Positions 1-40,486 of a DNA stretch of 64,000 nucleotides are shown one piece after another. Within the stretch, counting starts at the first letter, position 1, and each line of letters starts with the position of its first letter. A model generated the notes under the pieces. The model worked only from the letters and a program-made list of their open reading frames with translations, was not told where the DNA came from and ran no database searches. The stretch lies in IMG/VR virus record IMGVR_UViG_3300027985_001318, positions 1-64,000 of that record, one strand, 5' to 3'. The position numbers and the translations under genes are program-made.

Positions 1-2202
1 TTGCACTGTGGCGCTAACCAATGCCATGGTGGTAGCCGGCGACATGTAAAGATCGTCGGCCGATCCAAGAAGGGCTTCTTCTTGGGTGGCCATTGCATAG
101 TTCTGTACGTTACCTAGGCCCAGTTGAATTGCAGTTACACCGTGTGGATTCTCGGTATTGGCTATGTGTTGATCGATGGAGCTGCTAAAACCAGAGATAG
201 CTGCGCTGATAGCTGCATTGGTAGCTAGCGGACTCATGTACAGATCGTCTGCTTCGCCAAGGGTAGCATCATCGGCAGACGCCATTCCATAGTTCTGCAC
301 CAGACCCAAACCGACTTGGACTTTGGTGACACCATGCGGATTATTGGCGGCATTAAGGTGCTCACTGAGAGAATTACCTACCAGCCGAATAATCATGGAG
401 GTTACGCCACCTGGGGTAACAAAGCGGTTGGTGGCACTACCGCTATCAAGTTCACTCTGGTCGGCGGTAGCGAAGTTATCTACGCTACCTAGCCCGACTT
501 GCGTCTTAGTGACGGCGTGCGGGTTGTCGAGATCAGAAACGTGACCGGCGATGGTTTCTGAGCTCAAACGAGAGATCATCTGGCTAACGCCGTAGATCGT
601 AACGTAATGAGCGTTGGAATTTCCAGCCTCGTAGTCTTCGTCAGTACCTATCGGGAGGTTTTGGACATTACCCAAACCCACTTGGGCTTTAGTCACTACG
701 TGAGGATTGGTTTTGTCATTTATGTGGTCAGTGAAAGCAGAACCAATGCGGGACGCGATCAACGAAACCACGCCAGCTACAGTCACGAAGTGGCTGTTGG
801 ATGTGCCTGCTTCAAGTTCAGTATCTCCGGCGGTGGCAAAGTTGGAAACGTTACCCAAGCCTACCTGCGCCTTAGTGGTCGCATGAGGGTTACTCATGGC
901 GTTAAAGTGCGTTATGATCGGCGGCCAGAGATTCTCATCCAAAAGCCGTGTGGTCAAATATGGGGTCATAAATCCCAATTTGTAAAGACCGTCTATTGCT
1001 TGGGCTTCCGTGGCCAACGGATAGTTTGGTACGTTCCCCAAACCGACTTGAGATTGAGTAACTCCGTGCGGGTTTTCATGGTCATCCAGGTGATTCTGAA
1101 TACCTGAAGCGCCTGCTTGAGCGGCGATGGCGAGCTTGGTAAGCTCTGGGGTCATATAGCCATCATTGCCGGTACCACCAACCGCATCGGCTTCTGTGGC
1201 CAAGCCGAGATTCTGCACGTTACCAAGACCTAGCTGCGCTTTAGTAACCCCATGCGGATTGCTGGTGTTTGCCATATGTGCAGTAACGGCATCGGCTATC
1301 CAGTTACTGATTGCCAGCCAAGCTTTTCGTGGGGTAAGGAATTCTGAATCATTCTCCTTATCCAACGCGCTTGTATCGCTAGCTGTAGCAAAGTTATCCA
1401 CGCTACCCAGACCCACTTGTATTTTAGTGACGGCGTGGGGGTTACTTTTATCGGAAACGTGACCGGCCACTGAAGTAGAATTCAGTTTTGCGATCATCTT
1501 GGAAACATGGCCAGGAGAGATATAACGATCCAGACGAACACCCTCCAGAGCTTCTTCCTCTGTGGAGAGGGGGAAGTTGGAAACGTTACCCAAACCGACT
1601 TGCGCCTTGGTGACGGCGTGGGGGTTGGCCTTGTCTTGAATATGAACGTTTATTGCCGGATAAAGGCTATCGGCAGCGGCGAGAATGCGGTCTGCGATCA
1701 GATTCAGGGCATCGGCCAGCTCTTTACCGCCAACCATATCTTGTACGTTAAACAAGTGTTGAATGGGGGTAAAATACCACGGTATATCGGTGATCTTTTC
1801 CCAAGTAGTAACTCGAGGATCGGTTAGTGCATTGGAAAGCAAGGTCAGCAAGGATTGCTCGTCGAGCGTATACTCGCCACCAAGCGTATGGTAATCGTAC
1901 TCAAAAGTACCGGTCAGGGTGTTGTCGAGAATACAGATAGCGCCATATACCGGCTTATAGGTCCGACTGGAAACCAATTCGAACATATAGCCCGGTTCCC
2001 AATCGACACCTTTGGTAAGAACACGGCCAGTCCCCAGATGTCGAACTACAGCCGTATCACCGTAGAAGGGGGCTCCGTTAGGAATGATAAACATGAACGT
2101 ACCGTCTTGGGTGTTACTCAAGACTTTGCGTTCTCCTACGATATCGTTATCGGTATTGGTCCCGTAAGGATCCAGTTCCCACGTAAAAACTTTATTAAGC
2201 AT
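1..2202 (-). CDS. Tail fibre / virion structural protein with NPHxVTKxQVGLGNV repeats (runs off window start)
   Basis: Not in the ORF track because it is open to the window edge. Manual translation: ATG at 2202 preceded by GGAG; MLNKVFTWELDPYGTNTDNDIVGERKV...FIIPNGAPFYG; same frame still open at position 1 (...NPHGVTAIQLGLGNVQNYAMATQEEA...). Nine NPH repeats. Confidence 0.85.
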   Translation of the reverse strand, partial: MLNKVFTWELDPYGTNTDNDIVGERKVLSNTQDGTFMFIIPNGAPFYGDTAVVRHLGTGRVLTKGVDWEPGYMFELVSSRTYKPVYGAICILDNTLTGTFEYDYHTLGGEYTLDEQSLLTLLSNALTDPRVTTWEKITDIPWYFTPIQHLFNVQDMVGGKELADALNLIADRILAAADSLYPAINVHIQDKANPHAVTKAQVGLGNVSNFPLSTEEEALEGVRLDRYISPGHVSKMIAKLNSTSVAGHVSDKSNPHAVTKIQVGLGSVDNFATASDTSALDKENDSEFLTPRKAWLAISNWIADAVTAHMANTSNPHGVTKAQLGLGNVQNLGLATEADAVGGTGNDGYMTPELTKLAIAAQAGASGIQNHLDDHENPHGVTQSQVGLGNVPNYPLATEAQAIDGLYKLGFMTPYLTTRLLDENLWPPIITHFNAMSNPHATTKAQVGLGNVSNFATAGDTELEAGTSNSHFVTVAGVVSLIASRIGSAFTDHINDKTNPHVVTKAQVGLGNVQNLPIGTDEDYEAGNSNAHYVTIYGVSQMISRLSSETIAGHVSDLDNPHAVTKTQVGLGSVDNFATADQSELDSGSATNRFVTPGGVTSMIIRLVGNSLSEHLNAANNPHGVTKVQVGLGLVQNYGMASADDATLGEADDLYMSPLATNAAISAAISGFSSSIDQHIANTENPHGVTAIQLGLGNVQNYAMATQEEALLGSADDLYMSPATTMALVSATVQ
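100..1650 (-). repeat. Nine tandem ~61-aa protein repeats in the tail fibre
   Basis: NPH His codons at + positions 142, 334, 517, 700, 883, 1066, 1252, 1435, 1618. Spacing is 183 nt except 192 and 186. Confidence 0.9.
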
Positions 2203-2299
2203 AGCGCCACTCCATTATTGGCAATTTTATGGCAAACATAGTCCAGGCAGACCTAGAGTCATACCATACTCCGGTCTTTAAACAGTTTTTGAGGTGTAT

Positions 2300-3541
2300 A
2301 TGTACTCTTTAGTAAAAAGTTACGCCCAGCCAGTCGCTGAAGGATCGGAGTGGCTGGAGCCCGAATTGTCTGCGGTGCTTTGCAGTGCCGTTTTTTCAAC
2401 CTATCGTAAGGTTTACTTGGTGCTGAATAATACCTATTTAGATCATCAGGTAACTTTGGATTTGGATTTGGTTCGGAGTACGATACAAGTCCAACAAATC
2501 ACCATAGCTACTTGGCTTTTCAATCTTGGTAACGCTAGTCTCCCTACTGTAGATGGCGTACCGGTAATCAAGAAATCTAAGCTTTACGTTGGTGATGTTT
2601 TCCAAGCAGGTTATCGCGTTATCCCTACTTCTGTTAACGTCCATCCGGATACTCCGCTGAATACTGATCAGCAACACGACATCCTGTTGCTGCGCGACGA
2701 AGCAGACTATTTGTTTATGCAAGAGTACTGCCTTGCGTCAGTGAATGGTTATATTCATCGCAGTAGTAGTTCCGAAGACGGTTTTTATATCCTTAACGGG
2801 GTAGATACTGGTACCAAGACCAGGTCGAACCAGGTCTCGCTTTACAACTTCCAGGAACTAGGTAAAGTAGAACAGTTTAGCATAACTGAGGATATGATCG
2901 TTAAGCCGATCGATGATCTTCCTTTGGTTAAGAAGGTTTGGCTAAAGCTACCTAAGTCGGTGGTAGGCAAAACCGTCGGTCTGGTTATTGCCGGGTTCTT
3001 GCAATTGCTCGATGGGGTAGTTGATAAGGTAGCCGACGATATTGTTGTTTTAAACTTGGCTCGCCTGCCTTGGTTGGAACGCGTAGCCCACATTGGCGCT
3101 TCAATGGACCTTACCGGCTGTCCGACTGAATTCTACGAGGATAGTCGTCGGGTCCTGTCAGAGGTAGAGTCTGACGAGTTCGTGCGTTGGGTTCTGAAGC
3201 TTTCACAGACTTTTCTATTTACCGTAGATAACTCCAACCTCCAAGCAGAACGGATGGTACTGGAAGATATCCCAATCCCCGGCCGTTGGTTAGCTCACGA
3301 GTACCCGGTTGGTTATATCCAGATCTCCGGCGGTTATACACCTAATTGTCTGGTAATCCCTGAAGGAACTCGTTATGGCATCGTCGCCAGACCGCTTTAC
3401 GATCAAGGACGGTTGCGTGAACAGCAACGATTCCGCGACCACATGGTCTACAACGATGCGATCGATGTCTCCAAGTATCGTAAGCCGGCTAGAGCTACTC
3501 TAGTTCGGATTGTATCAACTTCAATTGAAATTAAGGTGTAA
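2300..3541 (+). CDS. Virion structural protein (phiKZ-like)
   Basis: 413-aa ORF; GAGG 5 nt before ATG 2300; divergent from the tail fibre within the structural block. Confidence 0.65.
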   Translation: MYSLVKSYAQPVAEGSEWLEPELSAVLCSAVFSTYRKVYLVLNNTYLDHQVTLDLDLVRSTIQVQQITIATWLFNLGNASLPTVDGVPVIKKSKLYVGDVFQAGYRVIPTSVNVHPDTPLNTDQQHDILLLRDEADYLFMQEYCLASVNGYIHRSSSSEDGFYILNGVDTGTKTRSNQVSLYNFQELGKVEQFSITEDMIVKPIDDLPLVKKVWLKLPKSVVGKTVGLVIAGFLQLLDGVVDKVADDIVVLNLARLPWLERVAHIGASMDLTGCPTEFYEDSRRVLSEVESDEFVRWVLKLSQTFLFTVDNSNLQAERMVLEDIPIPGRWLAHEYPVGYIQISGGYTPNCLVIPEGTRYGIVARPLYDQGRLREQQRFRDHMVYNDAIDVSKYRKPARATLVRIVSTSIEIKV

Positions 3542-3544
3542 GGT

Positions 3545-5590
3545 ATGTCTGATTTGATGGCTGGTTTGATTGAGAAACGTCTGGCGGTTTCTCAGGAAGG
3601 GGTATTGGATTTTCTGTTTGGTAAGAAGTCCAGCAAGAACGAAACTCCTTCTTTGAAGAAGTTGGAACGACTCGAGGAAGAACTCAAGAAAGTAACGTCT
3701 AGGGAAGCTTTGGACGTAGCCAATGGCCGTAGTAAACCGAGCCAGGAGGTTCTTGACAAACTCATGGAGCTAGCGGAGAAACACGCAGCTCCGTCTATGG
3801 TTTACAAGCAAAACCGGCAGCTGTTTGACATCCTTGTAAAGCTGGTAAAGTTGCCGGAACCTAAACCATACTGGGTTTATGAAGAACTCAGCGGAGCCTC
3901 TTCCGCTAGCGAAGCGGAAAAGATCGCCAAGGATTTCATCCGAGTGATGGAACCCCAGGTTAAGCTGATGTCTCAAGCCAAAAACTTGAAGATCTACGAA
4001 GCCAGTGAGGATCAGCTGTTTGCTGACGTTAGTTCGGGGTTTCAGGCAAATCTGAAGTTTGCTGAGAGTTGTCGCTACGACCACCCCACCCCACACGAAA
4101 CTTATTTGGCAGCCTGTTTGGCTCAGGACTTCGGCTATCCGGCCAGTGTGTTCAGCAATCGTGAAGGCGATGGCGTTAGTGAGCTCTTTGAGCAGAACGA
4201 AACGCTGTTTAAGTCACTAGAAAAAGCTCTGGATGAAATAGCCGATGAAGCCGGGGCTTTCGAAATGTGCTGGATGGGTGGCGATCCAGCCAATCGTAAG
4301 CACTTTTATCCTGGTAACGACGATGTCGATTTCCTGGTACGCGGTCGCTGTATTCTGCTCGACTACGTATTGGACTTGAAGATCGCTCAGGAAGATCTGG
4401 ACGGGAATGACGAAGAAGCTGAAAAGCTCTTTGCCGATATCAATACCGCGATGGAGTCACTGGATGATCTGGAACTTCTGGTAAGTAGCATGGAGGCCGC
4501 TCAAGCTGATCCGCATTTTGGTAAGTACAACTTACCTTTGTACAAATCGATGCTGGATCAAACTTGCGCTAAACTCCAGCTTTCCGGCACCGCACTGTCT
4601 GTCGAGTCTTTTGGTCCGCAGAACGTACTTTCCACCGAAGGCGTCAAAGAAGTTATCTCTAAACTCTACGGGGTAATTAAAGAGCTTCTGGCGAGACTCG
4701 TGACTTGGTTCAAGAACACGTTCACTGCAAAGAACGCTGTGATGTTGAGGATAGCTAAAGGTAACGTTAATGCTCTGAGCAAACTGAACAAAACCAGCTG
4801 GAATGGCGATACCTCTGCCAGTTTCAAAAGTAAATCTGTCTGTGGCCTGATTTTTGCAAAAACTTCCGGTCACTGCAAAAACTTCCGTGAGCTGAAAGAT
4901 TTGTTGGATGGTTGGGACAAACAAATCGAGCATTATCAGGTAGATATCTTTGATTCGTTGCAAATCCTCAAATCTGCGGTTAGAAAACAACCAGAAGACC
5001 AGGAAAAACCACTGGGGGATTTAGAGGAAGGGATATTGGGAGGTAAGAACAACCCAGGTTCTTATGTCAATAAAGCCAGGGAGTTTATGCGACTGGCTGG
5101 TAACGAGCAAGACAAGCGACCGAACGAAGAGAAAGATTACGTCGTTCTGGATAGTCTTGGTAGTTTTGAAGACATGAAGCATTTTTGTCAGAAACTAGAG
5201 CACGACAAAAAGGTTCGCTCTATGGATAATGGGTTGCAAGAGATCATAGACACCTGCGATGATCTTATCAAGAAAGTTAATAAAACCTTGAACGACAACC
5301 CAAACTCCGCCAGAATATGCCGTCATGTTCAGAACGCTCTGAGTTCAGCTTATGCTTTTAACCATCTTCGTGCTGAACTATTGTTTCAGACACATCGCGC
5401 CCTGGAAGTTTCTTTACGAGCCGGGGCTGGCGATAAGAATGGTTCTAGCTATAGCGCTTACCAGCACCAGCAAAACGACCAGCAGTTTATGCAGCAGCAT
5501 AACCAAAATCACCACCAAGCAGTCCAACAGCACAATCAAGATATGCTGCACCATCAGCAGATGGTACAGCACCACAACAGCGGTTTCTAA
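3545..5590 (+). CDS. Internal head protein with multiple S/A-x-E processing sites and a Q/H-rich C-terminus
   Basis: 681 aa; VSQE|GVLDFLFG, IAQE, TAME, SSME, LSVE, LSTE|GVKEVISKL...LVTWFK, typical of phiKZ-like inner head paralogs. Confidence 0.65.
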   Translation: MSDLMAGLIEKRLAVSQEGVLDFLFGKKSSKNETPSLKKLERLEEELKKVTSREALDVANGRSKPSQEVLDKLMELAEKHAAPSMVYKQNRQLFDILVKLVKLPEPKPYWVYEELSGASSASEAEKIAKDFIRVMEPQVKLMSQAKNLKIYEASEDQLFADVSSGFQANLKFAESCRYDHPTPHETYLAACLAQDFGYPASVFSNREGDGVSELFEQNETLFKSLEKALDEIADEAGAFEMCWMGGDPANRKHFYPGNDDVDFLVRGRCILLDYVLDLKIAQEDLDGNDEEAEKLFADINTAMESLDDLELLVSSMEAAQADPHFGKYNLPLYKSMLDQTCAKLQLSGTALSVESFGPQNVLSTEGVKEVISKLYGVIKELLARLVTWFKNTFTAKNAVMLRIAKGNVNALSKLNKTSWNGDTSASFKSKSVCGLIFAKTSGHCKNFRELKDLLDGWDKQIEHYQVDIFDSLQILKSAVRKQPEDQEKPLGDLEEGILGGKNNPGSYVNKAREFMRLAGNEQDKRPNEEKDYVVLDSLGSFEDMKHFCQKLEHDKKVRSMDNGLQEIIDTCDDLIKKVNKTLNDNPNSARICRHVQNALSSAYAFNHLRAELLFQTHRALEVSLRAGAGDKNGSSYSAYQHQQNDQQFMQQHNQNHHQAVQQHNQDMLHHQQMVQHHNSGF

Positions 5591-16115: not shown

Positions 16116-16260
16116 AATGGTTCTCCAGAGGCGGTAACAGCGGTAATCAGAGTCATAGCATGTACATCGGTGAAAATAAACAGTTGCTGCTGATGGTATG
16201 CGTACTAGATCCGTTTTGTACAAAATATTTTTCAGAAACCATTTGTAATGGGAGTCTAAG

Positions 16261-17766
16261 ATGTTTGACAAGTTTCCACGGGCGCCGAGTATGCGTCCAT
16301 TTTTGAACATAGGTTTTCCTTTTGATATCCAGACCGGCAAGTACTACACGGGTAAAGATGGCGAGAGTATCTTGAATGGTGGCTTGCAGCATGTTACTGG
16401 AATTGGTGGTGGCGGTAACCTCTACAAGTCCACCGTACTGCACTACATGCATCTGATTGCCCTGGAGCGTTACGGTGCGGCTTGTGGGATGGTCTACGAT
16501 ACCGAGCCGCCTAGCTGTAACTATCCGCGTTTTGAACAACTCTCCAAACGCATGCTGCGACTCACTGAGGGTAGTTTGCGCGATCGACTACTGCTGACCG
16601 ACTCCACAGTAATCGTCGGTAACAAGTGGTTTAAGCAGTTAAAAGAAGCGATCGACTTCAAGCTGAAGTCAGGCAAAGACGGTTATGCTGAAACTCCCTT
16701 CTTGGATGAAAAGGGCAATAAGATCAAAACTCTGTTGCCCAATCTGATCTCTATCGACTCGATGAGTATGTTCACTTCTGACAACGTACAGGACATCCTC
16801 GATGAGAACGAAATCGGGGCTTCTGGTGCCAACATTGAAGCTATGCGTGGCCAGGGCGCTAAGACTCAGATGTTGGTGCAGCTACCCGACATGGCTACTG
16901 GTTCCAATACGTTTATCATGATGACCGCGCACGCCGGTAAGCAATACCAGATGGATCCTCGGACCCCGCTGCAGAAACAACTTACGTTCCTGAAGCAGGA
17001 CGTTAAGTTCAAGAACGTACCTGAGAAGTTTTTGTTCCTGACTAACAACCTTTGGTACGCGGTAGCGGCTTCTCCGATGATTAACCGCACTACTAAGGCG
17101 CCTGAGTATCCTCGCAACAGCAATGACGATCTCTCCGGCAATACCGACCTGATGCTCGTTACGTTCTCTAACCTGCGGGCTAAGAATGGTCCTTCCGGTA
17201 TGCCTTTCGAACTGATCATTTCTCAATCGGAAGGCTATCTGCGCGAACTCAGCGCTCTGCACTATCTGAAGAACAGTGATCGTTTTGGTTTGGGTGGTCA
17301 CGACCGCGCCTATTTCTGTCATCTGCGTCCAGATGTTTCTCTCCAACGCACCACCGTGCGTAGCAAAATCGACGGGGATGCTAAGCTGGGGCGTGCTATC
17401 GAAATCTGCGCAGAACTCTGTCAGATTACCAACCTCTGGCTCGACACGCCAGCCAGTGTTCTTTGTACCCCTGAAGAACTCTACCGCGACATCGCTGCGA
17501 TGGGCTATGATTGGGAAGAGTTGTTGGACACGCGTGGTTTCTGGGTTTACGAGAACGACAAACATCCGCAGAATTTCCTTTCCACTAAGGACTTGCTGAT
17601 GATGCGTGTTGGTAAATACCAGCCGAAATGGGCTACGCGCAAAGCTTCAGTCAGTCCATCGACTGTTACCAAGGAAGAAGTTGGGGTGGATTCAACGACT
17701 AACGTGGTAGAGCTTAAACCGAAACATCTGGTTAAGGCTTCTTTGGGCGAAGCTACTGCCGCCTAA
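16261..17766 (+). CDS. uvsX: UvsX/RecA-like recombinase (phiKZ gp152-like)
   Basis: P-loop GGGGNLYKST, YDTE, Walker B ISIDS, MTAH, RAKNGPSG. Confidence 0.85.
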   Translation: MFDKFPRAPSMRPFLNIGFPFDIQTGKYYTGKDGESILNGGLQHVTGIGGGGNLYKSTVLHYMHLIALERYGAACGMVYDTEPPSCNYPRFEQLSKRMLRLTEGSLRDRLLLTDSTVIVGNKWFKQLKEAIDFKLKSGKDGYAETPFLDEKGNKIKTLLPNLISIDSMSMFTSDNVQDILDENEIGASGANIEAMRGQGAKTQMLVQLPDMATGSNTFIMMTAHAGKQYQMDPRTPLQKQLTFLKQDVKFKNVPEKFLFLTNNLWYAVAASPMINRTTKAPEYPRNSNDDLSGNTDLMLVTFSNLRAKNGPSGMPFELIISQSEGYLRELSALHYLKNSDRFGLGGHDRAYFCHLRPDVSLQRTTVRSKIDGDAKLGRAIEICAELCQITNLWLDTPASVLCTPEELYRDIAAMGYDWEELLDTRGFWVYENDKHPQNFLSTKDLLMMRVGKYQPKWATRKASVSPSTVTKEEVGVDSTTNVVELKPKHLVKASLGEATAA

Positions 17767-32587: not shown

Positions 32588-34222
32588 ATGGCAAATCGTC
32601 CACCACTTAATCTCTCGATACTGAAACCCACAAAAGAGATGTTGCAGACTTTACGTCCAGTAAAAGTTTCCGATATTTTCGATGGGATGTCCACTAACTT
32701 CCATGAAGATGGGCTTTTCAGTGTCTCTACTTTTGGCCGGGTCGGCTCTGACGAACGAGATAAACGTTTCGGCTTTATCAACATCAAGGTACCGATTTTT
32801 CACCCGCTCCTTTACAAGCGCCTGATGTCATTAAAGGCGCTTTATAGCACTGTTATTTCGGGCAAGAGCTTTGCGAAATGGGACCCGATATCTAACGATC
32901 TGGTACTAGCCAGACCAGATGACGAGGGAGCCGGTACCGGCTTTGGGTTCTTTGTAGAGCACTGGGAGAAGATTCGTTTCCATACTACTCAGTCTCTGCA
33001 GCGACAGATGAAGATCGAAGTTATTGAACGGAATCGTCATAAGGCATTGACCGACAAGATCTTGGTGTTACCTGCTGGCTTGCGAGACATTGAGATCGAT
33101 GCCGATGGTCGGAAAGTCGAGGACGAACTTAACAATCCGTATCGTCGTTTGATAGCCGTTTCTAATACCATACCCGATAGTATTTCTGATTTCAACGCTC
33201 CATTCCTGGACAGTTCCAAGCGTAGCTTGCAAACCTCTTTTGGTTTGGTCTACGAAATGATCAACCAGATCCTTTACGGGAAGAAAGGCTTTATCCAAGC
33301 CAAATGGGCAAGTCGTCGAATCTTCAATGGTACTCGTAACGTTATTAGTACCATGGAAACTGCATCTGAAGTTTTCGATGGGCCGCGAAGTGCTGACTTG
33401 CAAGACACTCAGATTGGTTTGTTGCAGACCATGAAATCCGCATTGCCGGTAGCTGTGCACTGCTTAATGACCGGATGGCTGTCTCAGGTGTTTGGTAACG
33501 CCGATCAGAGCGCGGTGTTGGTTAATCCGAAAACCTGGCACGCCGAATACGTAGATGTGGACGTCGATACTATCGATCGTTGGACTACTGCCGAAGGTCT
33601 CGAGAAAGCTATTGAGCGTTTCAGCGAAACCAAGATCCGTCAAAGACCTCTTCGCATCGATGGGTACTATGTTGGATTGGTTTATGTAGATGAAAAGCAC
33701 TTCAGGATCTTCAACGACATTGATCAGCTTCCGAAACATCTAGATAAAAAGAACGTACATCCGATGACTATGACTGAGTTGATGTATCTGTCAGGTTATC
33801 GGCGCTGGTATGAGCTTTACACTTTCGGTACTCGATTCCCTGTAGCTGAATTAGGTAGTATGTACCCGTCTCGGGTGTATACTCGGACTACAGTCATAGC
33901 CTCTGCTAAAGAAGAGTTGGATGAAAACTGGGAACCGAAGGGCAAAGAATTCGTTGCAAAGGAGTTTCCTGTATCCGATCTCACCGCTCCTTTCATGGAC
34001 TCGCAAGCACCACATCCAAGTAACCTGAAGAACTTACAAGGTGACCACGACGGCGATACAATGTCTTGCGATACCGTCTATATCCAGGAGTCTATCGAGG
34101 AAGTTAAGAACTATCTCAACAGTTTGGCATCGATCATGACGCCGTCTGGTAAAATCTATACTCCGGCCAATACCGACACCATCGAACTGGTGTTGCGTAA
34201 CATATTGAGAACTCCGAAATGA
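32588..34222 (+). CDS. Virion RNA polymerase beta'-like catalytic subunit (phiKZ gp180-like)
   Basis: DGLFSVSTFG, VLPAGLRD, GKKGFIQ..RRIFNGTRNVI, RFP, catalytic loop GDHDGD. Confidence 0.92.
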   Translation: MANRPPLNLSILKPTKEMLQTLRPVKVSDIFDGMSTNFHEDGLFSVSTFGRVGSDERDKRFGFINIKVPIFHPLLYKRLMSLKALYSTVISGKSFAKWDPISNDLVLARPDDEGAGTGFGFFVEHWEKIRFHTTQSLQRQMKIEVIERNRHKALTDKILVLPAGLRDIEIDADGRKVEDELNNPYRRLIAVSNTIPDSISDFNAPFLDSSKRSLQTSFGLVYEMINQILYGKKGFIQAKWASRRIFNGTRNVISTMETASEVFDGPRSADLQDTQIGLLQTMKSALPVAVHCLMTGWLSQVFGNADQSAVLVNPKTWHAEYVDVDVDTIDRWTTAEGLEKAIERFSETKIRQRPLRIDGYYVGLVYVDEKHFRIFNDIDQLPKHLDKKNVHPMTMTELMYLSGYRRWYELYTFGTRFPVAELGSMYPSRVYTRTTVIASAKEELDENWEPKGKEFVAKEFPVSDLTAPFMDSQAPHPSNLKNLQGDHDGDTMSCDTVYIQESIEEVKNYLNSLASIMTPSGKIYTPANTDTIELVLRNILRTPK

Positions 34223-37200
34223 TTACTTATCAGCAGTTTTATCGTCGTTATGGGGTAAGAAAGCTGGAAGAGTTGTTGGTATTCAAACAGAAACCCCTGC
34301 GTGGGTGTTTGCTACCGAATCGTCCGGTTATTCATTTACTCCCGAGCAATCTACAAGAAACCAAAGTAGACATGAATGACTACTTCATTTCTTCGCAGAA
34401 GGGACTGACTTACTGCATTCATCAAACTGAGCTGAAATCGGAAATTGGTAACCCGGTCAGAAACTCTGTAAACGCTCAGGGTCTTGTACGTCAGCTGGAG
34501 AAAACACAGCGCAGCTTGCGGCGAGTTCGACAATTCGAAACCGTTAATCGCGATCAGCGGGCGGCTTTGATTGTTAACTATTCGCCATTGCAAGCACTCT
34601 ATCGTTATCGAATTAGTTTCCTTACCAGCTGGCAGCGTTGGGCAAATATTTTCGCAACAATGACTGCTAACATCAGCGAGCTCTCCAAAGAGACAGACCG
34701 TCATCACTATCTGCGTTTTGACATTCCTGAGTTTCTCCCTTCTATTTCTGCTCTGCGGATGGGTGCTCGTGGGATGTCTAAAATGGTGGTGGAAACACTC
34801 CGTACACCGGAGGCGTTCTTTTTGCTGGAGTTGTGGAAGTGGTCTATTCGTGAACCTTCTTTGTTTGACGGTTTGCCGAAAGAACATCTCGACAAGTTTA
34901 CTCTGCTGATAGTCGACGGCGATCGTTTTGGTAGCCTCAACTTTGGTCAGTTGTCTGAGTGGCGCGAAGCTGGTACCCGGGTAGATGAAAACGGAGAAGT
35001 GCGTTCAGTAGGTAACTTTTCTCGTCAACTGCTCTATCTGTTCGTACAGTTCGTTAAAGGGCGTACCGCAGATCCAGCAACGAACGATCTCAAAGAGACA
35101 CCAGCAGAAACCAAGGAGCTTGAAGATACGCTCAACCATCTCTCTGGCGACGATGAGAGCGATAACCAAGCCGCAGAAGAAATCATGGAAGAAGATGCTG
35201 AGCAGGCTGAAGAAGATCTCGATAAACTGGTAGAAGAGATCAACGAGCAAGCTAGCGAATTAGATAATGATTTCGATATCGAAGACGATTCTGTTTTCGA
35301 AACAGCCGGGCCGGTAAAGAAGGAAACTAGCAACACCAGTAATGGCGGTAGCCTTGATGTAACAAAGGCTCCGGAGACTGGAGTTCAGCGAAAAGTCGAA
35401 GAACTCAGTAAAACAGGGATTCTTTCGGCGGCTGAACAAAAGCGGTATCATAAGCTATCGGAAACTTACTTGCGGCTACCTAACCCTTACGGAAAGGGTA
35501 CGATTGCCGAAGCGATCGCTTACGACCCGATGGAAACCAAGATAGATCCGGCAGCTACCAGGTTGGAAGATATCGAAGGCGTGCTTGATAAAAGTATGCT
35601 CAACGATACCCTCACTGTGTTTGATGAGGAATATATCACGAAAGTATTGCATCGCGATATACTTCGCTCAGTAATGGCTTTCCAACGCGATGGTACTTCA
35701 ATTACCGACATCAAAGTAACTCGTGTAGTCGATGCCGTAAACAAGTATGATGTTATCACTCTGAGACTTCAACCGGTGAACGGTAAGCCAACCACTCTGA
35801 ACATTAAAGTTCAAGTGATCGAGAAGGACGGTACTTGGGTAGCTGATGGTGTTAACTATCGACTGCGGAAACAACGTCGCGAATACCCCATCGTAAAAAC
35901 GGCTCCGGATCAAGTAGCTCTTTCCAGCTATCTTGGTAAGTTGTTCATTAGTCGTAGCAGTAAGGTAGTACATGACTTTGACCGCTGGATGCAGGCGCAA
36001 ATCATCGGAGCAGTAATGGCTGGTGATAGCCAAATCAGTTCTATCAGCTATCGAGCACATCGCAGTAAAGCAGTTATCCCCCCGCTACCTAGGATTTATA
36101 CTGGGCTAGCCAAGCGTTTTAACGCTTTCACCGCTAACGGTTATCGTGTCTTTATTGACTATGTAAACCGTAATGAGTTCTTTACCGAAAAAGAGCTTTC
36201 AGTGGAACAGGCCAATCCTGGATTGGTATTGTTCGCTAAAGGCGTAGATGCTGGAATCAAGGATCAGTTATTGTTGGTTGACGATAACGGTACGATTTAC
36301 TCTGTCGGTAAGGCCGGTCTTGCGGTTTATGGAGATATCAGCACTTTAACTGGTATTGATCTATCCAAGGCTCCGCTGCAGCAAGACGTGATCAAATTGC
36401 TCGGTAAGAATGTTCCACTCGGGGCAGTAATTTGCTACTACTTTGGTTTGGATCAAGCCATTACCAAACTTGGCGCTAAAGTACGTCGCGTCCAACGTGG
36501 TAGCAAAATAGAATTGGAATCCGATGAATACGCCATTCGATTCCAAGACCAAGTTCTGGTCTTCTCTAAGCAAGACCGTGCCGCCAGTTTGTTGTTTGCT
36601 GGTTTCAACACGTTTGCTAGACAGATCAACTGTTATCCTGTTGCCGAGTACAACAAGAAAGATATCTACCTGAACCTCTTCGAGAGTATCGGGTTAGGTG
36701 TCCGCTATCTTCGTGAGCTCGATCATCTGGATCGTTATTTCATCGATCCCATGACTCTGAAGATTCTTGTTGAACATAACGAACCTACTGACTTTGTTGG
36801 TTTGTTGTTAAAGGCCAATGAGTTGCTGACTACGGATTACGTGGAGAAGAAACGTCGGATGTTGAAGGGCTATGAACGGGTTGCTGCTGCGGTCTATCGC
36901 GAAGTGGCTCAGTCTAGCCGTAACTACAACTCGCGGCCGACGTCTCCCCGCTATGGCGTTGATCTTAAGCCTACGGCGATCTGGCAGGCTATCCAACAGG
37001 ACCCGAGTATCTCTCAGGTACAGAACATCAACCCGATCCACAACCTTAAGGAACAGGAAGCAGTTACTGAAGGCGGTACTGGTGGTCGTAGTAGTCGAAC
37101 TGTGACAGCTGAACATCGGGCTTACGATAAGGACGACTTTGGGGTTATCTCAGAGGCAACTGTCGATAGTTCCGAAGTGGCCATCTCTACTTCCACTTCA

Positions 37201-37320
37201 GCCGATCCAAACTTAATATCTCTGACTGGCGAGACGCGCGAGTTCGATAAAGACAACGATGGGATTGTTTCCATTATGTCTACGTCAGCCAACGCGTCGC
37301 CATGTGCGTTGCACGATGAT
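34219..37320 (+). CDS. Virion RNA polymerase beta-like subunit (phiKZ gp178-like), exon 1
   Basis: NPIHNLKEQEAVT..GTGGR, GVISEATVDSS; ends at ALHDD, the RpoB HDDxxR motif; 1034 codons. Confidence 0.9.
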
Positions 37321-37716
37321 CAAATTCGGGTCCGGTTGGTGAGTAATTACCAACTGAGCGCTTCTTAATTGACGGGAACCCAATTGTAATCTAAAGCCTT
37401 GTACACCAACCCAATCAGGGAAACCTATTGGCGGCTGAACTAATCACTCAGGTATGGTAACAGAGACAAGGATGAGGCTATTTGGCCGAAATGGGGAATC
37501 ACGCAGCAAAGCTCCTAAGGTTCTACGGAATACGGAGTGGGTCCAACGACTATGGGAGTTCATCGCCCATACACGAGCAAGTGCCGTGGAAATAGAAGCC
37601 CCCTCTAGTGAGGGTGAAGATATAGTCTGAACATCCAAGGAAAACTTGGAGCAGTCCTTTACTGTCGGGAGACAGCGAGGGGCGGGGTGGCTTAACGACC
37701 CATCCGAACAAAATTG
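37321..37716 (+). mobile_element. Group I self-splicing intron (IA2-like, no homing endonuclease ORF)
   Basis: P AATTGACGGGAAC 37367-79; Q AATCACGCAGC 37497-507; R GTCCAACGACTATG 37541-54; S AAGATATAGTCT 37617-28. P3 GCTTCT/AGAAGC, P7 GACTA/TAGTC. Exon-terminal U pairs with G in P1; terminal G at 37716. Confidence 0.93.
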
Positions 37717-38844
37717 CCTAAACGCGTAAACTTTATCAGCATTCAGCATAGCTCTGGGATTGCTGCGGTCGGTTATCAGCACCAACCGATTCGTACTGGC
37801 TACGATCAGGTCATACCTCAGAGAGTTACCGATCTCTATGCTTTTGCTGCGCGTAAGGCCGGGGTGGTTAAGGAGATATCTTCTACTCACCTTTTGGTCG
37901 AGTACGAAGACGGTGAGTTGGTTGGGGTAGAGTTAGGTCGACGGTTTGGTACAGCTGAAGGTAGCGTGTTCCCGCATCTGGTAGTGAGCGATGCTGTTGT
38001 AGGTCAGTCTTTCAAGCGCGGTCACGTACTAGCTTGGAACGATGGTTGGTTTGTGCGAGATTTCTTCGATGAGACCCAAGTACTTTGGAAGAATGCGTGT
38101 TTGATGAACGTAGCGTTGATGGATGTCCCTGAAACATACGAAGACTCTCATGCTATCTCGAAGAAAGCTTCGGCTAAGATGCTGTCATATGCCACTAAGA
38201 TCAAGACGATACACCTGAAGTTTTCACAGAAGGTTACTCAATTGGTCAGAGAGGGCGAGGACGTTGATGCTGAACAGATTCTTTGCATGATTGAGGATGC
38301 TCTGACTGCCGATAACGGGCTGTTCACAGACGACAACCTAGATGCTCTGAAGATGTTGTCAGCTCAAACGCCGCGTTCTGGAGTTACTGGTAAAGTAGAG
38401 AAAATTGAGGTGCTTTACCGTGGCGACAAGGAAGATATGTCAGAATCTCTGCAGCAAATCTCTGGGTTATATGACAGGAAGCGCGCTCTACAGGTTCGTC
38501 GCCTGCGTAACGAAGGGGCAACCACTGGTCGAGTTTTGGACTCCGTTCGCGTCGATGGTACCATCCTCGAACAAGACAGTGTCGCTATCCGGATTTTCAT
38601 TACCTATCCGGTGGAATTCGGCGTTGCTGATAAGTCGGTGTTTGGTTTGCAGTTGAAGACCGTAAATGGGCAAGTGTTTGAAGGCGAGAACATGACTGAA
38701 GATGGTGAAGAAATTGACGCCAAGTTCAGTAATATGTCTGTCTTTAACCGTATCGTCGACTCAGCTTACCGCATCGGTTGCGGTACTCGAGTTCTATTGG
38801 CTGGATCAAAACTTACTGCGAAGATTTACAGAGGGGAAGTGTAA
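37717..38844 (+). CDS. Virion RNA polymerase beta-like subunit, exon 2
   Basis: PKRVNFISIQHS continues HDD in frame; TYEDSHAIS, ADKSVFGLQLKTV, IDAKFSNMSVFNR. The TTG start in the ORF track lacks an SD and is the intron end. Confidence 0.9.
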   Translation, partial: PKRVNFISIQHSSGIAAVGYQHQPIRTGYDQVIPQRVTDLYAFAARKAGVVKEISSTHLLVEYEDGELVGVELGRRFGTAEGSVFPHLVVSDAVVGQSFKRGHVLAWNDGWFVRDFFDETQVLWKNACLMNVALMDVPETYEDSHAISKKASAKMLSYATKIKTIHLKFSQKVTQLVREGEDVDAEQILCMIEDALTADNGLFTDDNLDALKMLSAQTPRSGVTGKVEKIEVLYRGDKEDMSESLQQISGLYDRKRALQVRRLRNEGATTGRVLDSVRVDGTILEQDSVAIRIFITYPVEFGVADKSVFGLQLKTVNGQVFEGENMTEDGEEIDAKFSNMSVFNRIVDSAYRIGCGTRVLLAGSKLTAKIYRGEV

Positions 38845-38845
38845 C

Positions 38846-39037
38846 ATGTTTGATAATCCGCTAGCACTTACCGCCGTTACTACGGCGAATTTGATTTCCA
38901 TCGCCACTGGGGTGATGCGAAAGTATGGTAGCGATGTGGAAGCCGTTCCTGAGGAGATTTCCGAAATGGAGCGCGAGACCGGCATCGAATCTTTGGTTGC
39001 AGCCAAGCTGCAAGCTAAACTGGCTTATCTGGGTTAA
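38846..39037 (+). CDS. Small hypothetical protein (63 aa)
   Basis: ATG 38846 just after the exon 2 stop, GAGGGG upstream; MFDNPLALTAVTTANL... Confidence 0.6.
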   Translation: MFDNPLALTAVTTANLISIATGVMRKYGSDVEAVPEEISEMERETGIESLVAAKLQAKLAYLG

Positions 39038-39046
39038 GGGGGCGGT

Positions 39047-40486
39047 ATGTTGCGTGTTCAATCTATTGCCTGTGGCAAGGATCTTGGTTATCTCATCGGG
39101 GAAAAGGGTTTTGTACTTACCCCCAAAGCCGGTACTCCGTTGAAGATCATGTTCGACTGTAGTACCAAAGGTAATCAACTCATCACCGCCGGCGAGGGCT
39201 TCACTGAATTCGACCAGGTGGTGGCTCTGACTAACTCGGAACTGGGGGAGGAAACTCCCCACGACCTGGCTCAGAAACAAGCCGTGACCGCTGCTTACCA
39301 GAGCTGCTCTAACGCCATTGCGTTTTCTCGCAATACCGTGAACCCGGCCATCAAAGCAATTCACGAAGCCGTTGGTAACGCAGCTAATGAACTGGTTGAC
39401 CCAGATCGCATGGCTGTCGCTCCGTTCTACTACGACGAACTGTTCGATCTGACTGTCTGGTCTGCAATGATCAGTAAGCACGAAGAAATCCCGGTAGCGT
39501 CTGTTCGTATCGATACTGGGACCTATCCGGACCCGGATCCTTTGTATCTGGCAGAAGTTATCAAGTCTGGTTCTGACAAGATCGACGAGCGCATCTCCGC
39601 GTTCATCAGTTCTCAGTCCGATGGTTACTTGGCTTCCGTTTACTCGGCTATGTTCAACGGTAACCTGGCCGCCAATGGTCGGCTTCAGCTCTTCAGTCGC
39701 ACTCAGAACGGGGAACTCACCTTTGCTCCGAACCGACTGAACGTGCACCACTGCGCGGTAGCCTACCTGCTCGCTAAGGGGATGATTAACAAGTCTCCTG
39801 AAGGCGTACGTATGAGCCAGAAGGATTACGAGTATCAGGTATCTACCTTGATCGCCCAAGCTGGTCGTCGTCTCTGTCGCGCTATCGAGATGCGTAAGGA
39901 AGACCTTCGCACCGGTTTTCTGATACTGGACCCTGCCGTTGGCAATCGAACAGTGATCGTAGTAAACGGTGACGTTTACGATAAATTCCTGCGCGATGGC
40001 GGCACGCCTGAAATCGTTATCGGTACCGTCCAGATGGATGGCGACAATTTCTTGCCTGGGGTCGTTGCACGTGCTGAAGAGGCCTTGCGGACTTACCGGA
40101 AGTATGAAGCTGAGCTCATCGAGCGTCATGACGCCAGCTTCGTGAGCCGGATTAAATCGGCACTGAATCACCAGATCATGGAACTGGTTCGCAACACCCC
40201 TGACGAAGAACTGTCTCGTTCTCGTCAGGAATGCGTACAGGAGCTTCGCGAACACCTCCGTCTCGTTGGCCGACAAGAACTCGATAACCTCTGGGTGCTG
40301 ATTCGTCGGTTGGTTTGCCATATCCTCTACCCGCACAGCGATGCGCTGAAGATACTAACCTCTTTCGACGAGGTTGCCGGCCGACTGCCTGACGCAAACT
40401 CCAATCTGGTAGAGTACCACGTACTGCTCAACTATGTACTTGACTATCTGGTCGACTGCTTGGAAGTGCGCGATATGCCGTGCTAA
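39047..40486 (+). CDS. Head-associated protein (phiKZ gp177-like by synteny)
   Basis: 479 aa; VNGDVYDKFLRDGGTPE; lies between vRNAP beta and the protease; strong codon bias. Confidence 0.65.
   Translation: MLRVQSIACGKDLGYLIGEKGFVLTPKAGTPLKIMFDCSTKGNQLITAGEGFTEFDQVVALTNSELGEETPHDLAQKQAVTAAYQSCSNAIAFSRNTVNPAIKAIHEAVGNAANELVDPDRMAVAPFYYDELFDLTVWSAMISKHEEIPVASVRIDTGTYPDPDPLYLAEVIKSGSDKIDERISAFISSQSDGYLASVYSAMFNGNLAANGRLQLFSRTQNGELTFAPNRLNVHHCAVAYLLAKGMINKSPEGVRMSQKDYEYQVSTLIAQAGRRLCRAIEMRKEDLRTGFLILDPAVGNRTVIVVNGDVYDKFLRDGGTPEIVIGTVQMDGDNFLPGVVARAEEALRTYRKYEAELIERHDASFVSRIKSALNHQIMELVRNTPDEELSRSRQECVQELREHLRLVGRQELDNLWVLIRRLVCHILYPHSDALKILTSFDEVAGRLPDANSNLVEYHVLLNYVLDYLVDCLEVRDMPC

What the first reader, a model, noticed from the sequence alone, without database searches (positions are those of the whole stretch)
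37321..37716. ORF-less group I intron splits the virion RNAP beta gene inside the HDDxxR motif
Seen: P, Q, R and S elements; P1 exon GAU with GUC 37330-32 (U-G at the splice site); P10 GG 37328-29 with exon 2 CC; P2 37333-56 with a GUAA loop; P3; P7; extra P7.1 and P7.2 hairpins (IA2-like); P8 CCCUC/GAGGG; P9 UCCAAG/CUUGGA; terminal G. Removing 396 nt joins ALHDD to PKRVNFISIQ and gives 1409 aa. The unspliced mRNA stops at 37368, so splicing is obligatory. Established: phiKZ-like RNAP genes can carry group I introns, usually with homing endonucleases that can act in phage competition. Inference: this endonuclease-free intron may persist because it destroys a target site (immunity), because it is mobilised in trans, or as a splicing checkpoint on vRNAP supply. 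ORF callers will annotate two false genes here.
Basis: partly seen in the sequence, partly recalled or inferred. Interest (0 to 1): 0.8.

Follow-up and report, generated by a model that had tools for sequence, protein, structure and literature searches.

The report
ORF-less intron in phage RNA polymerase
A 396-base self-splicing-type (group I) intron with no gene of its own interrupts an essential virion RNA polymerase gene of an uncultured giant phage; it sits at the codon boundary already known to hold such introns in cultured relatives, so it is a new example of a known thing, and copies in other phages suggest it moves between genomes.

Summary
Window 37321-37716 matches the Rfam group I intron model above threshold (56.4 bits, cut-off 50). 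Removing it joins exon 1 (phage RNAP-beta profile positions 1-1050) to exon 2 (positions 1051-1423), giving ...HDD|PKR... and 1409 aa. A hand-drawn P1-P10 structure is 99.3% canonical across five close homologues, with 19 compensatory pairs. No endonuclease gene is in the intron, and none was found in the 64-kb window.

It is not a new kind of thing. PhiPA3 carries its gp210-HNH intron at the same codon boundary. 201phi2-1 (gp273/274, spliced reads published) and EL (gp186/187) carry ORF-less introns there. Many metagenomic relatives have a separate exon-2-sized gene call starting near this site.

First, a related phage (L018) has this intron at 95.9% identity while the flanking exons are about 76% identical (dS about 2.5), and the switch is sharp at both splice sites. 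Another pair shows the opposite imbalance. Intron and gene histories therefore look decoupled, by horizontal spread or intron-limited gene conversion. Second, the same genome has another group I intron, HNH-bearing, in its DNA polymerase gene, and it shares the 3' P9 domain.

Splicing was not observed here. Verdict: real, almost certainly functional, a new member of a known kind.

The parts
34219..37320 (+). Exon 1 of the virion RNAP beta-subunit gene (phiKZ gp178 / PhiPA3 gp211 homologue), 1034 aa, ending ...ALHDD.
   Evidence: phrog_3148 profile 1-1050, E 2e-283. tblastn against phiKZ-like phages ends exactly at this residue.
37321..37716 (+). Group I intron, 396 nt, with no endonuclease ORF.
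   Evidence: RF00028 at 56.4 bits. Homologues lie at the same site in L018, L008-L012, EL, 201phi2-1 and PhiPA3. Internal ORFs are 58 aa or shorter with no Pfam hit.
37717..38844 (+). Exon 2 (375 aa plus stop), starting PKRVNFISIQ.
   Evidence: phrog_3148 profile 1051-1423. tblastn pieces abut exon 1 without a gap in uninterrupted relatives.
37366..37368 (+). In-frame TAA that ends translation of the unspliced mRNA. It lies in the P3/J3-4 region.
   Evidence: ORF 34219..37368; sequence.
37318..37332 (+). P1 hairpin. Exon GAU (37318-20) plus C37321 pairs with G37329 and GUC (37330-32). U37320.G37330 is at the 5' splice site. G37328-29 can also pair with exon-2 C37717-18 to form P10.
   Evidence: Read from the sequence. 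All five close homologues keep these pairs. RNAalifold also pairs 37328-29 with 37717-18. The bases are invariant, so there is no covariation.
37333..37356 (+). P2, 10 bp with a GUAA tetraloop.
   Evidence: Two pairs show compensatory change in the close set and seven in the wide set.
37360..37365 (+). P3 5' strand (GCUUCU). It pairs with 37594-37599.
   Evidence: Rfam alignment. Five of six pairs covary across EL, L016, 201phi2-1, PhiPA3, L013 and L015.
37370..37505 (+). P4 (37370-76 with 37499-505; the P and Q elements) encloses P5 (37379-82 with 37492-95). P5 carries a 104-nt extension: P5a 37397-402/37466-71, the GAAA-loop hairpin P5b 37406-34, P5c 37435-51 and P5d 37476-87.
   Evidence: Rfam alignment for P4 and P5. 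P5b has 4 compensatory pairs and P5d has 2 in the close set. P5a has 6 of 6 in the wide set.
37506..37542 (+). P6, P6a and P6b. P6b is capped by a UACG loop, which is UUCG in L008 and L011.
   Evidence: P6a has 4 of 4 pairs covarying in the wide set.
37548..37552 (+). P7 5' strand (GACUA, in the R element GUCCAACGACUA). It pairs with 37623-37627 (UAGUC, in the S element GAAGAUAUAGUCU).
   Evidence: Sequence. Invariant in all nine family members.
37553..37588 (+). P7.1 (37553-69) and P7.2 (37572-88), the extra hairpins between P7 and the 3' strand of P3 that mark subgroup IA.
   Evidence: P7.1 changes UGGG/CCCA to UGAG/CUCA in L018. In the wider family the P7.1 stems read AGGC/GCCU and ACCG/CGGU, and the P7.2 stems vary around a conserved CAAGUG loop.
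37594..37599 (+). P3 3' strand (AGAAGC).
37601..37614 (+). P8 (CCCUC UAGU GAGGG).
   Evidence: The stems differ and stay paired in L016, 201phi2-1, L013 and L015.
37623..37627 (+). P7 3' strand (UAGUC), within the S element.
37634..37650 (+). P9 (UCCAAG GAAAA CUUGGA).
   Evidence: Four of six pairs are compensatory in the close set.
37654..37705 (+). 3' peripheral domain: P9.1 (37654-60/37677-83), P9.1a (37662-66/37671-75) and P9.2 (37685-90/37700-05). P9.2 has the conserved loop CUUAACGAC.
   Evidence: P9.1 and P9.1a have 3 compensatory pairs each. The P9.2 stem covaries around a conserved UUAACGA loop in PhiPA3, 201phi2-1, L013, L015 and L016. The domain is 85% identical to the 3' end of the DNA-polymerase intron of the same genome.
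37716..37716 (+). Terminal (omega) G of the intron.
   Evidence: Sequence. It is conserved as the last intron base in L018, L008, L012, L016, PhiPA3, L013, L015, 201phi2-1 and EL.

Best explanation
Window 37321-37716 is a self-splicing group I intron of subgroup IA (IA2-like, with P7.1 and P7.2) that carries no homing-endonuclease gene.

It interrupts the beta-subunit gene of the virion-packaged multisubunit RNA polymerase (phiKZ gp178 family) of an uncultured phiKZ-like jumbo phage. The split falls between the second Asp and the next codon of the conserved HDD|xKR active-site motif.

Inferred from the anatomy: the pre-mRNA folds so that exon GAU pairs with the guide GUC (U.G at the splice site). 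Guanosine attacks after U37320. The freed exon then attacks after G37716 and joins GATGAT to CCTAAA. Only the spliced mRNA encodes the 1409-aa subunit, because the unspliced frame stops at 37368.

The intron belongs to one family that occupies this same codon boundary in many chimalliviruses. Some members carry a gp210-type HNH endonuclease in loop L1 (PhiPA3). Others are ORF-less (201phi2-1, EL, this one).

Inferred from divergence patterns: the ORF-less intron does not simply descend with its host gene. It is exchanged between co-infecting phages. The route may be homing driven by an endonuclease supplied in trans, or gene conversion confined to the intron.

Inferred from published PhiPA3 work: by occupying the site, the intron removes the target of gp210-type endonucleases.
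For: Shown here:
- Rfam score above threshold.
- Seamless junction on the protein family profile, 1050|1051.
- Uninterrupted relatives are contiguous at exactly this point.
- 109 hand-assigned pairs are 99.3% canonical in five homologues, with 19 compensatory pairs. RNAalifold independently finds 19 compensatory pairs among 114.
- P3, P5a, P6a and P2 covary across EL, 201phi2-1, PhiPA3 and metagenomic members.
- Nearly all window-versus-L018 differences are compensatory or lie in loops.
- Same site in PhiPA3 (1352 nt, gp210 ORF), 201phi2-1 (336 nt) and EL (415 nt).
- 115 exon-2-sized gene calls exist in public data, and 54 start within -3 to +15 residues of the junction.
- Decoupling: window versus L018 has the intron at 95.9% and exon 2 at 76.4% (third codon positions 46.7%, dS about 2.5). 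L008 versus L011 has identical exon-2 proteins (dS 0.12) but 5% intron divergence. The intron/dS ratio spans 0.017 to 0.42.
- Intron 31-mers occur in at least 18 wastewater, freshwater and aquatic runs that hold none of the sampled exon words. Contigs there show the same pattern, with the intron about 98% and the exons about 80% identical.

From the literature:
- Proteomics and two spliced long reads for the 201phi2-1 intron (PMC11512511).
- gp210 nicks the intron-less site (PMC11620839).
Against: - No spliced RNA was seen for this phage. The one metatranscriptome contig that spans intron and exon 2 is unspliced and may be DNA or pre-mRNA.
- P1 is short (3 exon bp plus 1). P1, P4, P7 and P10 are invariant, so covariation does not support them.
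- The single-sequence fold is not better than shuffles (z = -1.83).
- The intron and exon trees of the five close sequences have the same topology. The horizontal-exchange claim therefore rests on branch-length disproportion, and only one lineage pair shows the strong excess of intron identity.
- No endonuclease that could mobilise the intron was found in the window. No exon co-conversion tract is visible at either boundary, which classical endonuclease-driven homing would usually leave.
Confidence: 0.85

Rival explanations
1. The intron is real and splices, but it is inherited strictly vertically. Its high identity between diverged phages reflects only strong purifying selection on a compact ribozyme with few freely evolving sites.
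For: Intron and exon distances give the same five-taxon topology. Most substitutions are compensatory or in loops, so constraint is strong. Intron distance plateaus near 0.12-0.14 between the two clades, as expected if the few free sites saturate.
Against: A single constraint level cannot fit both pairs. L008/L011 differ by 22 of 437 intron bases at dS 0.12, whereas window/L018 differ by 16 of 393 at dS about 2.5. The window/L018 intron is more conserved than second codon positions of the enzyme (95.9% against 93.1%), and this includes a 104-nt peripheral P5 extension that is 100% identical. L011 combines P2 and P9.1a variants seen in other lineages.
Confidence: 0.25
2. The intron is a dead relic. 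The gene is expressed as two separate polypeptides, as happens naturally for other split jumbo-phage RNAP subunits.
For: Jumbo-phage RNAP beta and beta' are naturally split elsewhere (PMC7598289). A TTG lies one codon before exon 2 (ORF 37714..38844). No spliced RNA was seen here.
Against: - The ribozyme core is intact and maintained by compensatory change.
- No Shine-Dalgarno-like sequence precedes 37714, and the last intron triplet is not a conserved start in relatives: TTG, ATG, ACG or AGG.
- The break falls inside a contiguous catalytic motif.
- The 201phi2-1 homologue is annotated as one joined CDS, with proteomic support and spliced reads.
Confidence: 0.04
3. The interruption is an assembly artefact, that is, a chimeric contig that joins an intron from another organism into the gene.
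For: The intron words are abundant in many unrelated runs. Other group I introns in those runs match short core stretches at very high depth.
Against: Two DNA runs hold 99-100% of the words across 2 kb, although they may be the source sample filed twice. Independent assemblies from other samples (L018, L008-L012, the X8 and X15 contigs) show the same intron joined to homologous exons at the same base.
Confidence: 0.01

Closest known systems
PhiPA3 vRNAP intron carrying the HNH homing endonuclease gp210 (Birkholz et al. 2024, PMC11620839)
   Same: - Same gene, and the same codon boundary immediately after the two conserved Asp codons (NDD|MKR against HDD|PKR).
- Same ribozyme family: GUC guide directly before P2, P7.1 and P7.2, and a P9.2 hairpin with the UUAACGA loop.
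- About 74% identity over the P7-P9 core.
   Different: PhiPA3's intron is 1352 nt, with a 330-aa HNH/NUMOD ORF filling loop L1. Here L1 is 7-9 nt and there is no ORF. The P5 extension differs. The host phages share only about 36-45% protein identity in this gene.
ORF-less introns of Pseudomonas phages 201phi2-1 (gp273/274) and EL (gp186/gp187)
   Same: - ORF-less group I introns at the identical HDD|xKR boundary (336 nt and 415 nt).
- The 201phi2-1 CDS is annotated as joined. Proteomics and two spliced long reads are published (PMC11512511).
- EL shares the GUAA-capped P2 and a similar P5 extension (ACCAA...GGAAACC...GGUAA...AAGGAU) with the window intron.
   Different: Sequence identity to the window intron is low outside the core. 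The 201phi2-1 intron is essentially PhiPA3's with the ORF absent and lacks the long P5 extension. EL annotates two genes, and its intron did not reach the Rfam threshold in the scan.
Phage T4 td / nrdB / sunY type introns (subgroup IA2)
   Same: Phage protein-coding host gene, an insertion in a catalytic motif, and the IA hallmark P7.1/P7.2 between P7 and P3' (own knowledge of Michel and Westhof's classes; the features are listed in PMC3984707).
   Different: The T4 introns carry (or carried) GIY-YIG or HNH ORFs in P6 or P9 loops. Here there is no ORF, and in this family the ORF sits in L1. No subgroup-specific model was available to test IA2 against IA1.
Collaborative homing: an ORF-less intron plus a free-standing endonuclease that cuts the intron insertion site (cyanophage S-PM2 psbA / F-CphI; T4 mobE / I-TevIII trans homing; PMC3984707, PMC2790892)
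   Same: An ORF-less intron sits at a conserved site that endonucleases of relatives are known to target. There are signs that the intron spreads without encoding its own enzyme.
   Different: No free-standing endonuclease lies next to the gene: the two RNAP genes overlap at 34219-34222. None was found in the window. The only gp210-family enzyme found in the genome is inside a DNA-polymerase intron. No co-conversion tract was seen.

Membership tests
Group I intron (Rfam RF00028) | Scores above the curated gathering threshold of the covariance model. | tested here: met
   56.4 bits against 50, E 1.2e-11, full model 1-253.
Group I intron (Rfam RF00028) | Conserved core helices P3-P9 with the P/Q/R/S sequence elements, supported by covariation. 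| tested here: met
   - P (AAUUGaCGGGAAC), Q (AAUCaCGCAGC), R (GUCCAACGACUA) and S (GAAGAUAUAGUCU) are present.
- 99.3% canonical cells and 19 compensatory pairs in the close set.
- P3 5/6, P5a 6/6 and P6a 4/4 pairs covary in the wide set.
- P4 and P7 are invariant, so they are uninformative.
Group I intron (Rfam RF00028) | U.G pair at the 5' splice site in P1, a terminal G, and exact restoration of the host reading frame. | tested here: met
   U37320.G37330; G37716; profile junction 1050|1051; the same boundary in eleven distinct homologous introns.
Group I intron (Rfam RF00028) | Guanosine-dependent self-splicing. | not testable with these tools
   No spliced joint appears in the RNA-library contigs laid on the region. 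The only support is by homology: two spliced reads and proteomics for 201phi2-1 (PMC11512511).
Subgroup IA2 | Extra hairpins P7.1 and P7.2 between P7 and the 3' strand of P3. | tested here: met
   P7.1 is 37553-69, with compensatory change in L018 and different paired stems across the family. P7.2 is 37572-88, with a conserved CAAGUG loop.
Subgroup IA2 | Assignment to IA2 rather than IA1 or IA3 by subgroup-specific criteria. | not testable with these tools
   No subgroup models were available. 'IA2-like' rests on resemblance to phage introns from memory.
Mobile (endonuclease-encoding) group I intron, PhiPA3 gp210 type | Occupies the gp210 homing site in the vRNAP beta gene. | tested here: met
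   Identical codon boundary after the DD codons.
Mobile (endonuclease-encoding) group I intron, PhiPA3 gp210 type | Encodes a homing endonuclease within the intron. | tested here: not met
   The longest internal ORFs are 58 aa (+) and 53 aa (-), with no Pfam family. tblastn with five gp210-family proteins finds nothing in the window (best E 0.28).
Collaborative-homing pair (ORF-less intron plus free-standing endonuclease for the same site) | A free-standing endonuclease gene in the same genome whose target is the intron insertion site. | tested here: inconclusive
   There is none in the 64-kb window. One gp210-family HNH (33% identity) lies elsewhere in the genome, but it is intron-encoded in the DNA polymerase gene, and its own insertion site resembles the vRNAP site only in the GAT that ends the 5' exon. 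About 150 kb of the genome could not be scanned, and cleavage was not testable.
phiKZ-type virion RNAP beta subunit (gp178 family) | Full-length homology and conserved gene neighbourhood. | tested here: met
   - phrog_3148 across both exons.
- tblastn to the gp178, gp209/211 and gp273/274 loci.
- Flanked by a gp180-like RNAP gene (phrog_2986) and a gp177-like gene (phrog_3841), as in 201phi2-1 and EL.
- phiKZ-specific Pfam families occur elsewhere in the window.
- Virion packaging itself is inferred from phiKZ (PMC11620839).

The most novel reading that the evidence does not exclude
The endonuclease-free ribozyme is itself the unit that moves. It spreads between phages whose genomes differ by about 25% and leaves no co-converted exon sequence. 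That would point to a route other than classical endonuclease-driven homing. One candidate is gene conversion confined to the intron between intron-bearing co-infecting genomes. The other is reverse splicing into GAU-ending sites followed by cDNA recombination.

Two observations fit modular, site-hopping introns. The same genome has a second intron in its DNA polymerase gene that also follows a GAU codon and uses a GUC guide. That intron shares only the 3' P9 domain with the vRNAP intron family: 85% identity to this genome's own vRNAP intron and 92% to that of another phage.
Probability: 0.2. Interest if true: 0.7.

Novelty: new member of a known kind. Interest (0 to 1): 0.4.

Why it matters
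Annotation: this essential gene will be called as two ORFs (1049 and 376 aa) unless the intron is recognised. Public collections hold many such half-genes.

Biology: the DD|xKR site of the virion RNAP gene is where PhiPA3 uses an intron endonuclease against phiKZ. The data here show that the site is occupied in many uncultured chimalliviruses, by both armed (HNH-bearing) and unarmed (ORF-less) versions of one intron family. An unarmed copy is almost identical in phages with strongly diverged genes. This makes it possible to ask whether unarmed introns act as immunity cassettes against armed ones, and how they spread without an enzyme of their own. EL and 201phi2-1 are cultured systems in which this could be tested.

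Tried and rejected
- Megablast of the region against 50,697 phage records gave no match. The phage is new at the DNA level.
- Pfam on the two exons found nothing useful, because the RNAP domains are too diverged. PHROGs resolved them.
- Single-sequence MFE folding had z = -1.83 and is not informative for a pseudoknotted ribozyme. RNAalifold mis-pairs the invariant P4 5' strand with the P7.2 3' strand and the adjacent J7.2/3 bases, so I kept the canonical P4 from the Rfam alignment.
- Two exact-pattern scans of metagenome contigs with intron 23- and 26-mers gave 0 hits. The same patterns in viral contigs returned only the source contig.
- Read laying showed no splice joint. The three joints listed are 37068>37429, 37464>37609 and 37203>37328 (with 121 letters between). 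They reflect short-sided matches of other introns or a diverged exon stretch, not splicing.
- L008 and L012, clear homologues of the intron, did not reach the Rfam gathering score in the multi-locus scan, probably because of their 42-nt P5 insertions.
- A search for a free-standing endonuclease in the window, using Pfam and PHROGs on 57 ORFs and tblastn with five gp210-family proteins, was negative.
- I considered that the 31-mer sharing with wastewater runs might come only from introns in other genes. This was rejected for at least X8 and X15, whose contigs join the intron to homologous exons. X15's exon 2 is close to L018's, so it is not a fully independent lineage.
- I did not hand-type a dot-bracket string into the count of structure pairs. 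Pair counts were computed in a script instead.
Full report
**1. Observation**

A scan of all 64 kb against Rfam gives a single hit, the group I intron model RF00028. It lies at 37311-37651 on the + strand, scores 56.4 bits (gathering 50, E 1.2e-11) and covers the full model. A permissive scan up to E 0.1 adds nothing.

The ORF list shows 34219..37368 (1049 aa) and 37714..38844 (376 aa) in different frames, with no ORF of 60 aa or more on the + strand between them.

Against PHROGs, 34219-37320 matches the 'RNA polymerase beta subunit' family phrog_3148 over profile positions 1-1050. Segment 37717-38841 matches positions 1051-1423 of 1424. Removing exactly 396 nt therefore restores one uninterrupted 1409-aa protein reading ...ALHDD|PKRVNFISIQ...

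tblastn against 50,697 phage genomes gives the same answer. In RP12, RP31, LucasX, Xoo-sp14, the phiKZ-type phages and others, the pieces homologous to the exon-1 tail and to exon 2 abut with no gap.

**2. Context**

The window is the first 64 kb of IMG/VR contig IMGVR_UViG_3300027985_001318 (223,650 nt), from a hydrothermal-vent metagenome.

It is a phiKZ-like jumbo phage. PhiKZ_VTX, phiKZ_gp29PR, phiKZ_IP, tail sheath and further RNAP subunits are present. It has no close DNA relative among sequenced phages. The best protein identities for this gene are about 45%, to Ralstonia, Burkholderia, Xanthomonas and Pseudomonas jumbo phages.

The gene is the homologue of phiKZ gp178, PhiPA3 gp211+209 and 201phi2-1 gp273/274. 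It has the same neighbours: a gp180-like RNAP gene upstream and a gp177-like gene downstream. In phiKZ this protein is a subunit of the virion-packaged RNAP (PMC11620839).

**3. Structure**

I combined the Rfam alignment, a five-sequence alignment of close homologues (A2), RNAalifold and my own pair table. The helices are:

- P1: 37318-21 with 37329-32, U37320.G37330 at the splice site.
- P10: G37328-29 with C37717-18.
- P2: 37333-56, 10 bp, GUAA loop.
- P3: 37360-65 with 37594-99.
- P4: 37370-76 with 37499-505.
- P5: 37379-82 with 37492-95, carrying a 104-nt extension (P5a-d, including a GAAA-capped hairpin).
- P6, P6a and P6b: 37506-42, with a UACG loop.
- P7: 37548-52 with 37623-27.
- P7.1: 37553-69. 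P7.2: 37572-88.
- P8: 37601-14.
- P9: 37634-50.
- P9.1 and P9.1a: 37654-83.
- P9.2: 37685-705.
- Terminal G: 37716.

Of 109 pairs, 99.3% of cells are canonical in the five sequences, and 19 pairs show changes on both sides. These lie in P2, P5b, P5d, P7.1, P9, P9.1 and P9.1a.

The wider alignment adds EL, 201phi2-1, PhiPA3 and three metagenomic introns. There P3 (5 of 6 pairs), P5a (6 of 6), P6a (4 of 4) and P2 (7 of 10) also covary. Read directly from the alignment, P7.1, P7.2, P8, P9 and P9.2 keep pairing with different sequences.

P1, P4, P7 and P10 never vary, so they are compatible with the structure but untested by covariation.

P7.1 and P7.2 between P7 and P3' place the intron in subgroup IA. 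'IA2-like' is a resemblance that I could not test further.

**4. The site in relatives**

PhiPA3 has a 1352-nt intron at the identical codon boundary (L001 2146-3497; NDD|MKR). Its 330-aa HNH/NUMOD endonuclease gp210 sits between the 5' splice site and the GUC guide, that is, in loop L1. [quoted passage not shown]

201phi2-1 has a 336-nt ORF-less intron at the same place. It is in effect PhiPA3's intron without the ORF. The CDS is annotated as joined, and proteomics plus two spliced long reads are published (PMC11512511).

EL has a 415-nt ORF-less intron there, annotated as two genes (gp186 and gp187). Its P2 and P5 extension resemble the window's.

In public protein collections, 115 ORFs of about 350-390 aa match exon 2. 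Of these, 54 begin within -3 to +15 residues of the junction, and many others begin at the first Met downstream.

All seven distinct contig types that I fetched are split exactly after DD:
- Four are ORF-less: L008-L012 type 437 nt, L016 311 nt, L017 about 410 nt, L018 394 nt.
- Three carry gp210-family HNH genes: L013, L014 and L015, at 31-47% identity to gp210 and to one another.

The site is therefore a widely used home for one intron family, in armed and unarmed forms.

**5. Intron and exon histories differ**

L018, a JGI metagenome contig, carries the intron at 95.9% identity (377 of 393). Exon 2 is 76.4% identical (codon positions 89.6, 93.1 and 46.7%; protein 85.6%; dN 0.093; dS about 2.5). 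The last 100 nt of exon 1 are 74% identical, and the next gene downstream 64.6%.

The change is abrupt at both splice sites. Differences occur at -4 and +3, so no co-conversion tract is visible.

Contigs in freshwater and aquatic runs show the same pattern, with the intron about 98% and the exons about 80% identical. X15's exon 2 is close to L018's, so it represents the same lineage. Intron 31-mers are present in at least 18 runs that hold none of the sampled exon words.

The opposite imbalance also exists. L008 and L011 encode identical exon-2 proteins (dS 0.12), yet their introns differ at 22 of 437 positions, including three compensatory pairs in P9.1a. L011 combines helix variants seen in other lineages.

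The ratio of intron distance to dS therefore ranges from 0.017 to 0.42. No single level of constraint fits both pairs. The five-taxon topologies agree, however, so the case rests on branch lengths.

I read this as exchange of the intron between phage lineages, independent of the flanking gene, with a probability of about 0.65.

**6. Endonucleases**

The intron's largest internal ORFs (58 and 53 aa) have no Pfam match. None of 57 window ORFs matches an HNH, GIY-YIG, LAGLIDADG or NUMOD family. tblastn with five gp210-family proteins finds nothing.

The two RNAP genes overlap by four bases. There is thus no free-standing endonuclease between them, unlike phiKZ with gp179.

Outside the window, the same genome encodes one gp210-family HNH (33% identity). 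It lies inside a second group I intron that splits the DNA polymerase gene at ...HVGD|IDV... (L030). That intron also follows a GAU codon and has a GUC guide. Its last 100 nt or so (S element to P9.2) are 85% identical to the window intron and 92% to L012's. The rest is not detectably similar.

**7. Mechanism and rivals**

Most likely this is a working self-splicing intron, and its removal is required to make the vRNAP beta subunit. This rests on the intact, covarying core, the exact frame restoration and the documented homologues. Splicing itself is inferred.

Persistence and spread are inferences. By occupying the site, the intron destroys the target of gp210-type enzymes. The divergence pattern suggests that it is copied between co-infecting phages. 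The route could be an endonuclease supplied in trans or conversion limited to the intron, which is an island of similarity in otherwise diverged genomes. The absence of co-conversion tracts is not what classical homing usually leaves, and it remains unexplained.

The rivals are strict vertical descent under strong constraint (0.25 against the exchange claim), a dead intron with two polypeptides (0.04), and an assembly artefact (0.01).

**8. Verdict**

The feature is a new member of a known kind. Group I introns at this exact site, with and without an endonuclease gene, are already known from PhiPA3, 201phi2-1 and (unrecognised in annotation) EL.

The added value here has three parts:
- The breadth of occupancy of this site in uncultured phages.
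- The near-identity of an unarmed intron across diverged hosts, with sharp boundaries.
- The modular relationship to a second, armed intron in the same genome.

Interest is 0.4.

Noticed in passing
L030 (IMGVR_UViG_3300027985_001318, contig 102383-111057, reversed), about 1922-5460: The same phage genome has a second group I intron outside the window, splitting its DNA polymerase gene at ...HVGD|IDVAAAY. Exon 1 matches phrog_3011 positions 3-495 and exon 2 matches 492-572. A 358-aa gp210-family HNH ORF (3683-4759) lies in the 5' part. The ribozyme core at 4747-5149 scores 28.3 bits, below the Rfam threshold. The 5' exon also ends in GAU, with a GUC guide.
   Followed up: partly
L030 5120-5220 against window 37616-37716: The 3' 100 nt of the DNA-polymerase intron (S element, P9, P9.1, P9.2) are 85% identical to the window's vRNAP intron and 92% to the vRNAP intron of another phage (L012). 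The rest of the two introns is not detectably similar. This suggests shuffling of intron modules.
   Followed up: partly
L020 (phage EL) 14893-16533: An above-threshold Rfam group I hit (16161-16533, 51.1 bits) begins at the 3' end of the gp185 HNH endonuclease gene, between RNAP genes gp184 and gp186. gp185 therefore looks intron-encoded rather than free-standing, and the annotated start of gp186 may be wrong.
   Followed up: no
L015 1644-2135; L013 820-1278; protein list: Many relatives have a second interruption of exon 1, about 480-500 codons upstream of the DD site. [quoted passage not shown] The window's gene is uninterrupted there.
   Followed up: partly
window 37433-37473 and 37609-37659: Many unrelated contigs in wastewater, freshwater and aquatic runs match only these two short stretches (part of the P5 extension and the S/P9 region), with summed depth up to about 3000. 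Their flanks have variable hairpins in the same places, so they look like other members of this intron class, which seem abundant in those samples.
   Followed up: no
L001 2175-2211; L013 and L015 just upstream of their HNH ORFs: In the endonuclease-bearing introns, the GGAGG ribosome-binding sequence of the HNH gene sits in the 3' arm of a hairpin (CUCCAA...UUGGAG type). This may tie endonuclease translation to RNA folding.
   Followed up: no
L008 5552-5988 against L011 1952-2388: Two contigs that encode the identical exon-2 protein have introns differing at 22 of 437 positions, including a fully swapped P9.1a stem (UUACC/GGUAA against CUGUC/GACAG).
   Followed up: partly
window 38861-40336 (-) against 39047-40486 (+): A 491-aa ORF on the minus strand almost completely overlaps the 479-aa gp177-like gene (phrog_3841) on the plus strand. 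It is probably a spurious shadow ORF.
   Followed up: no
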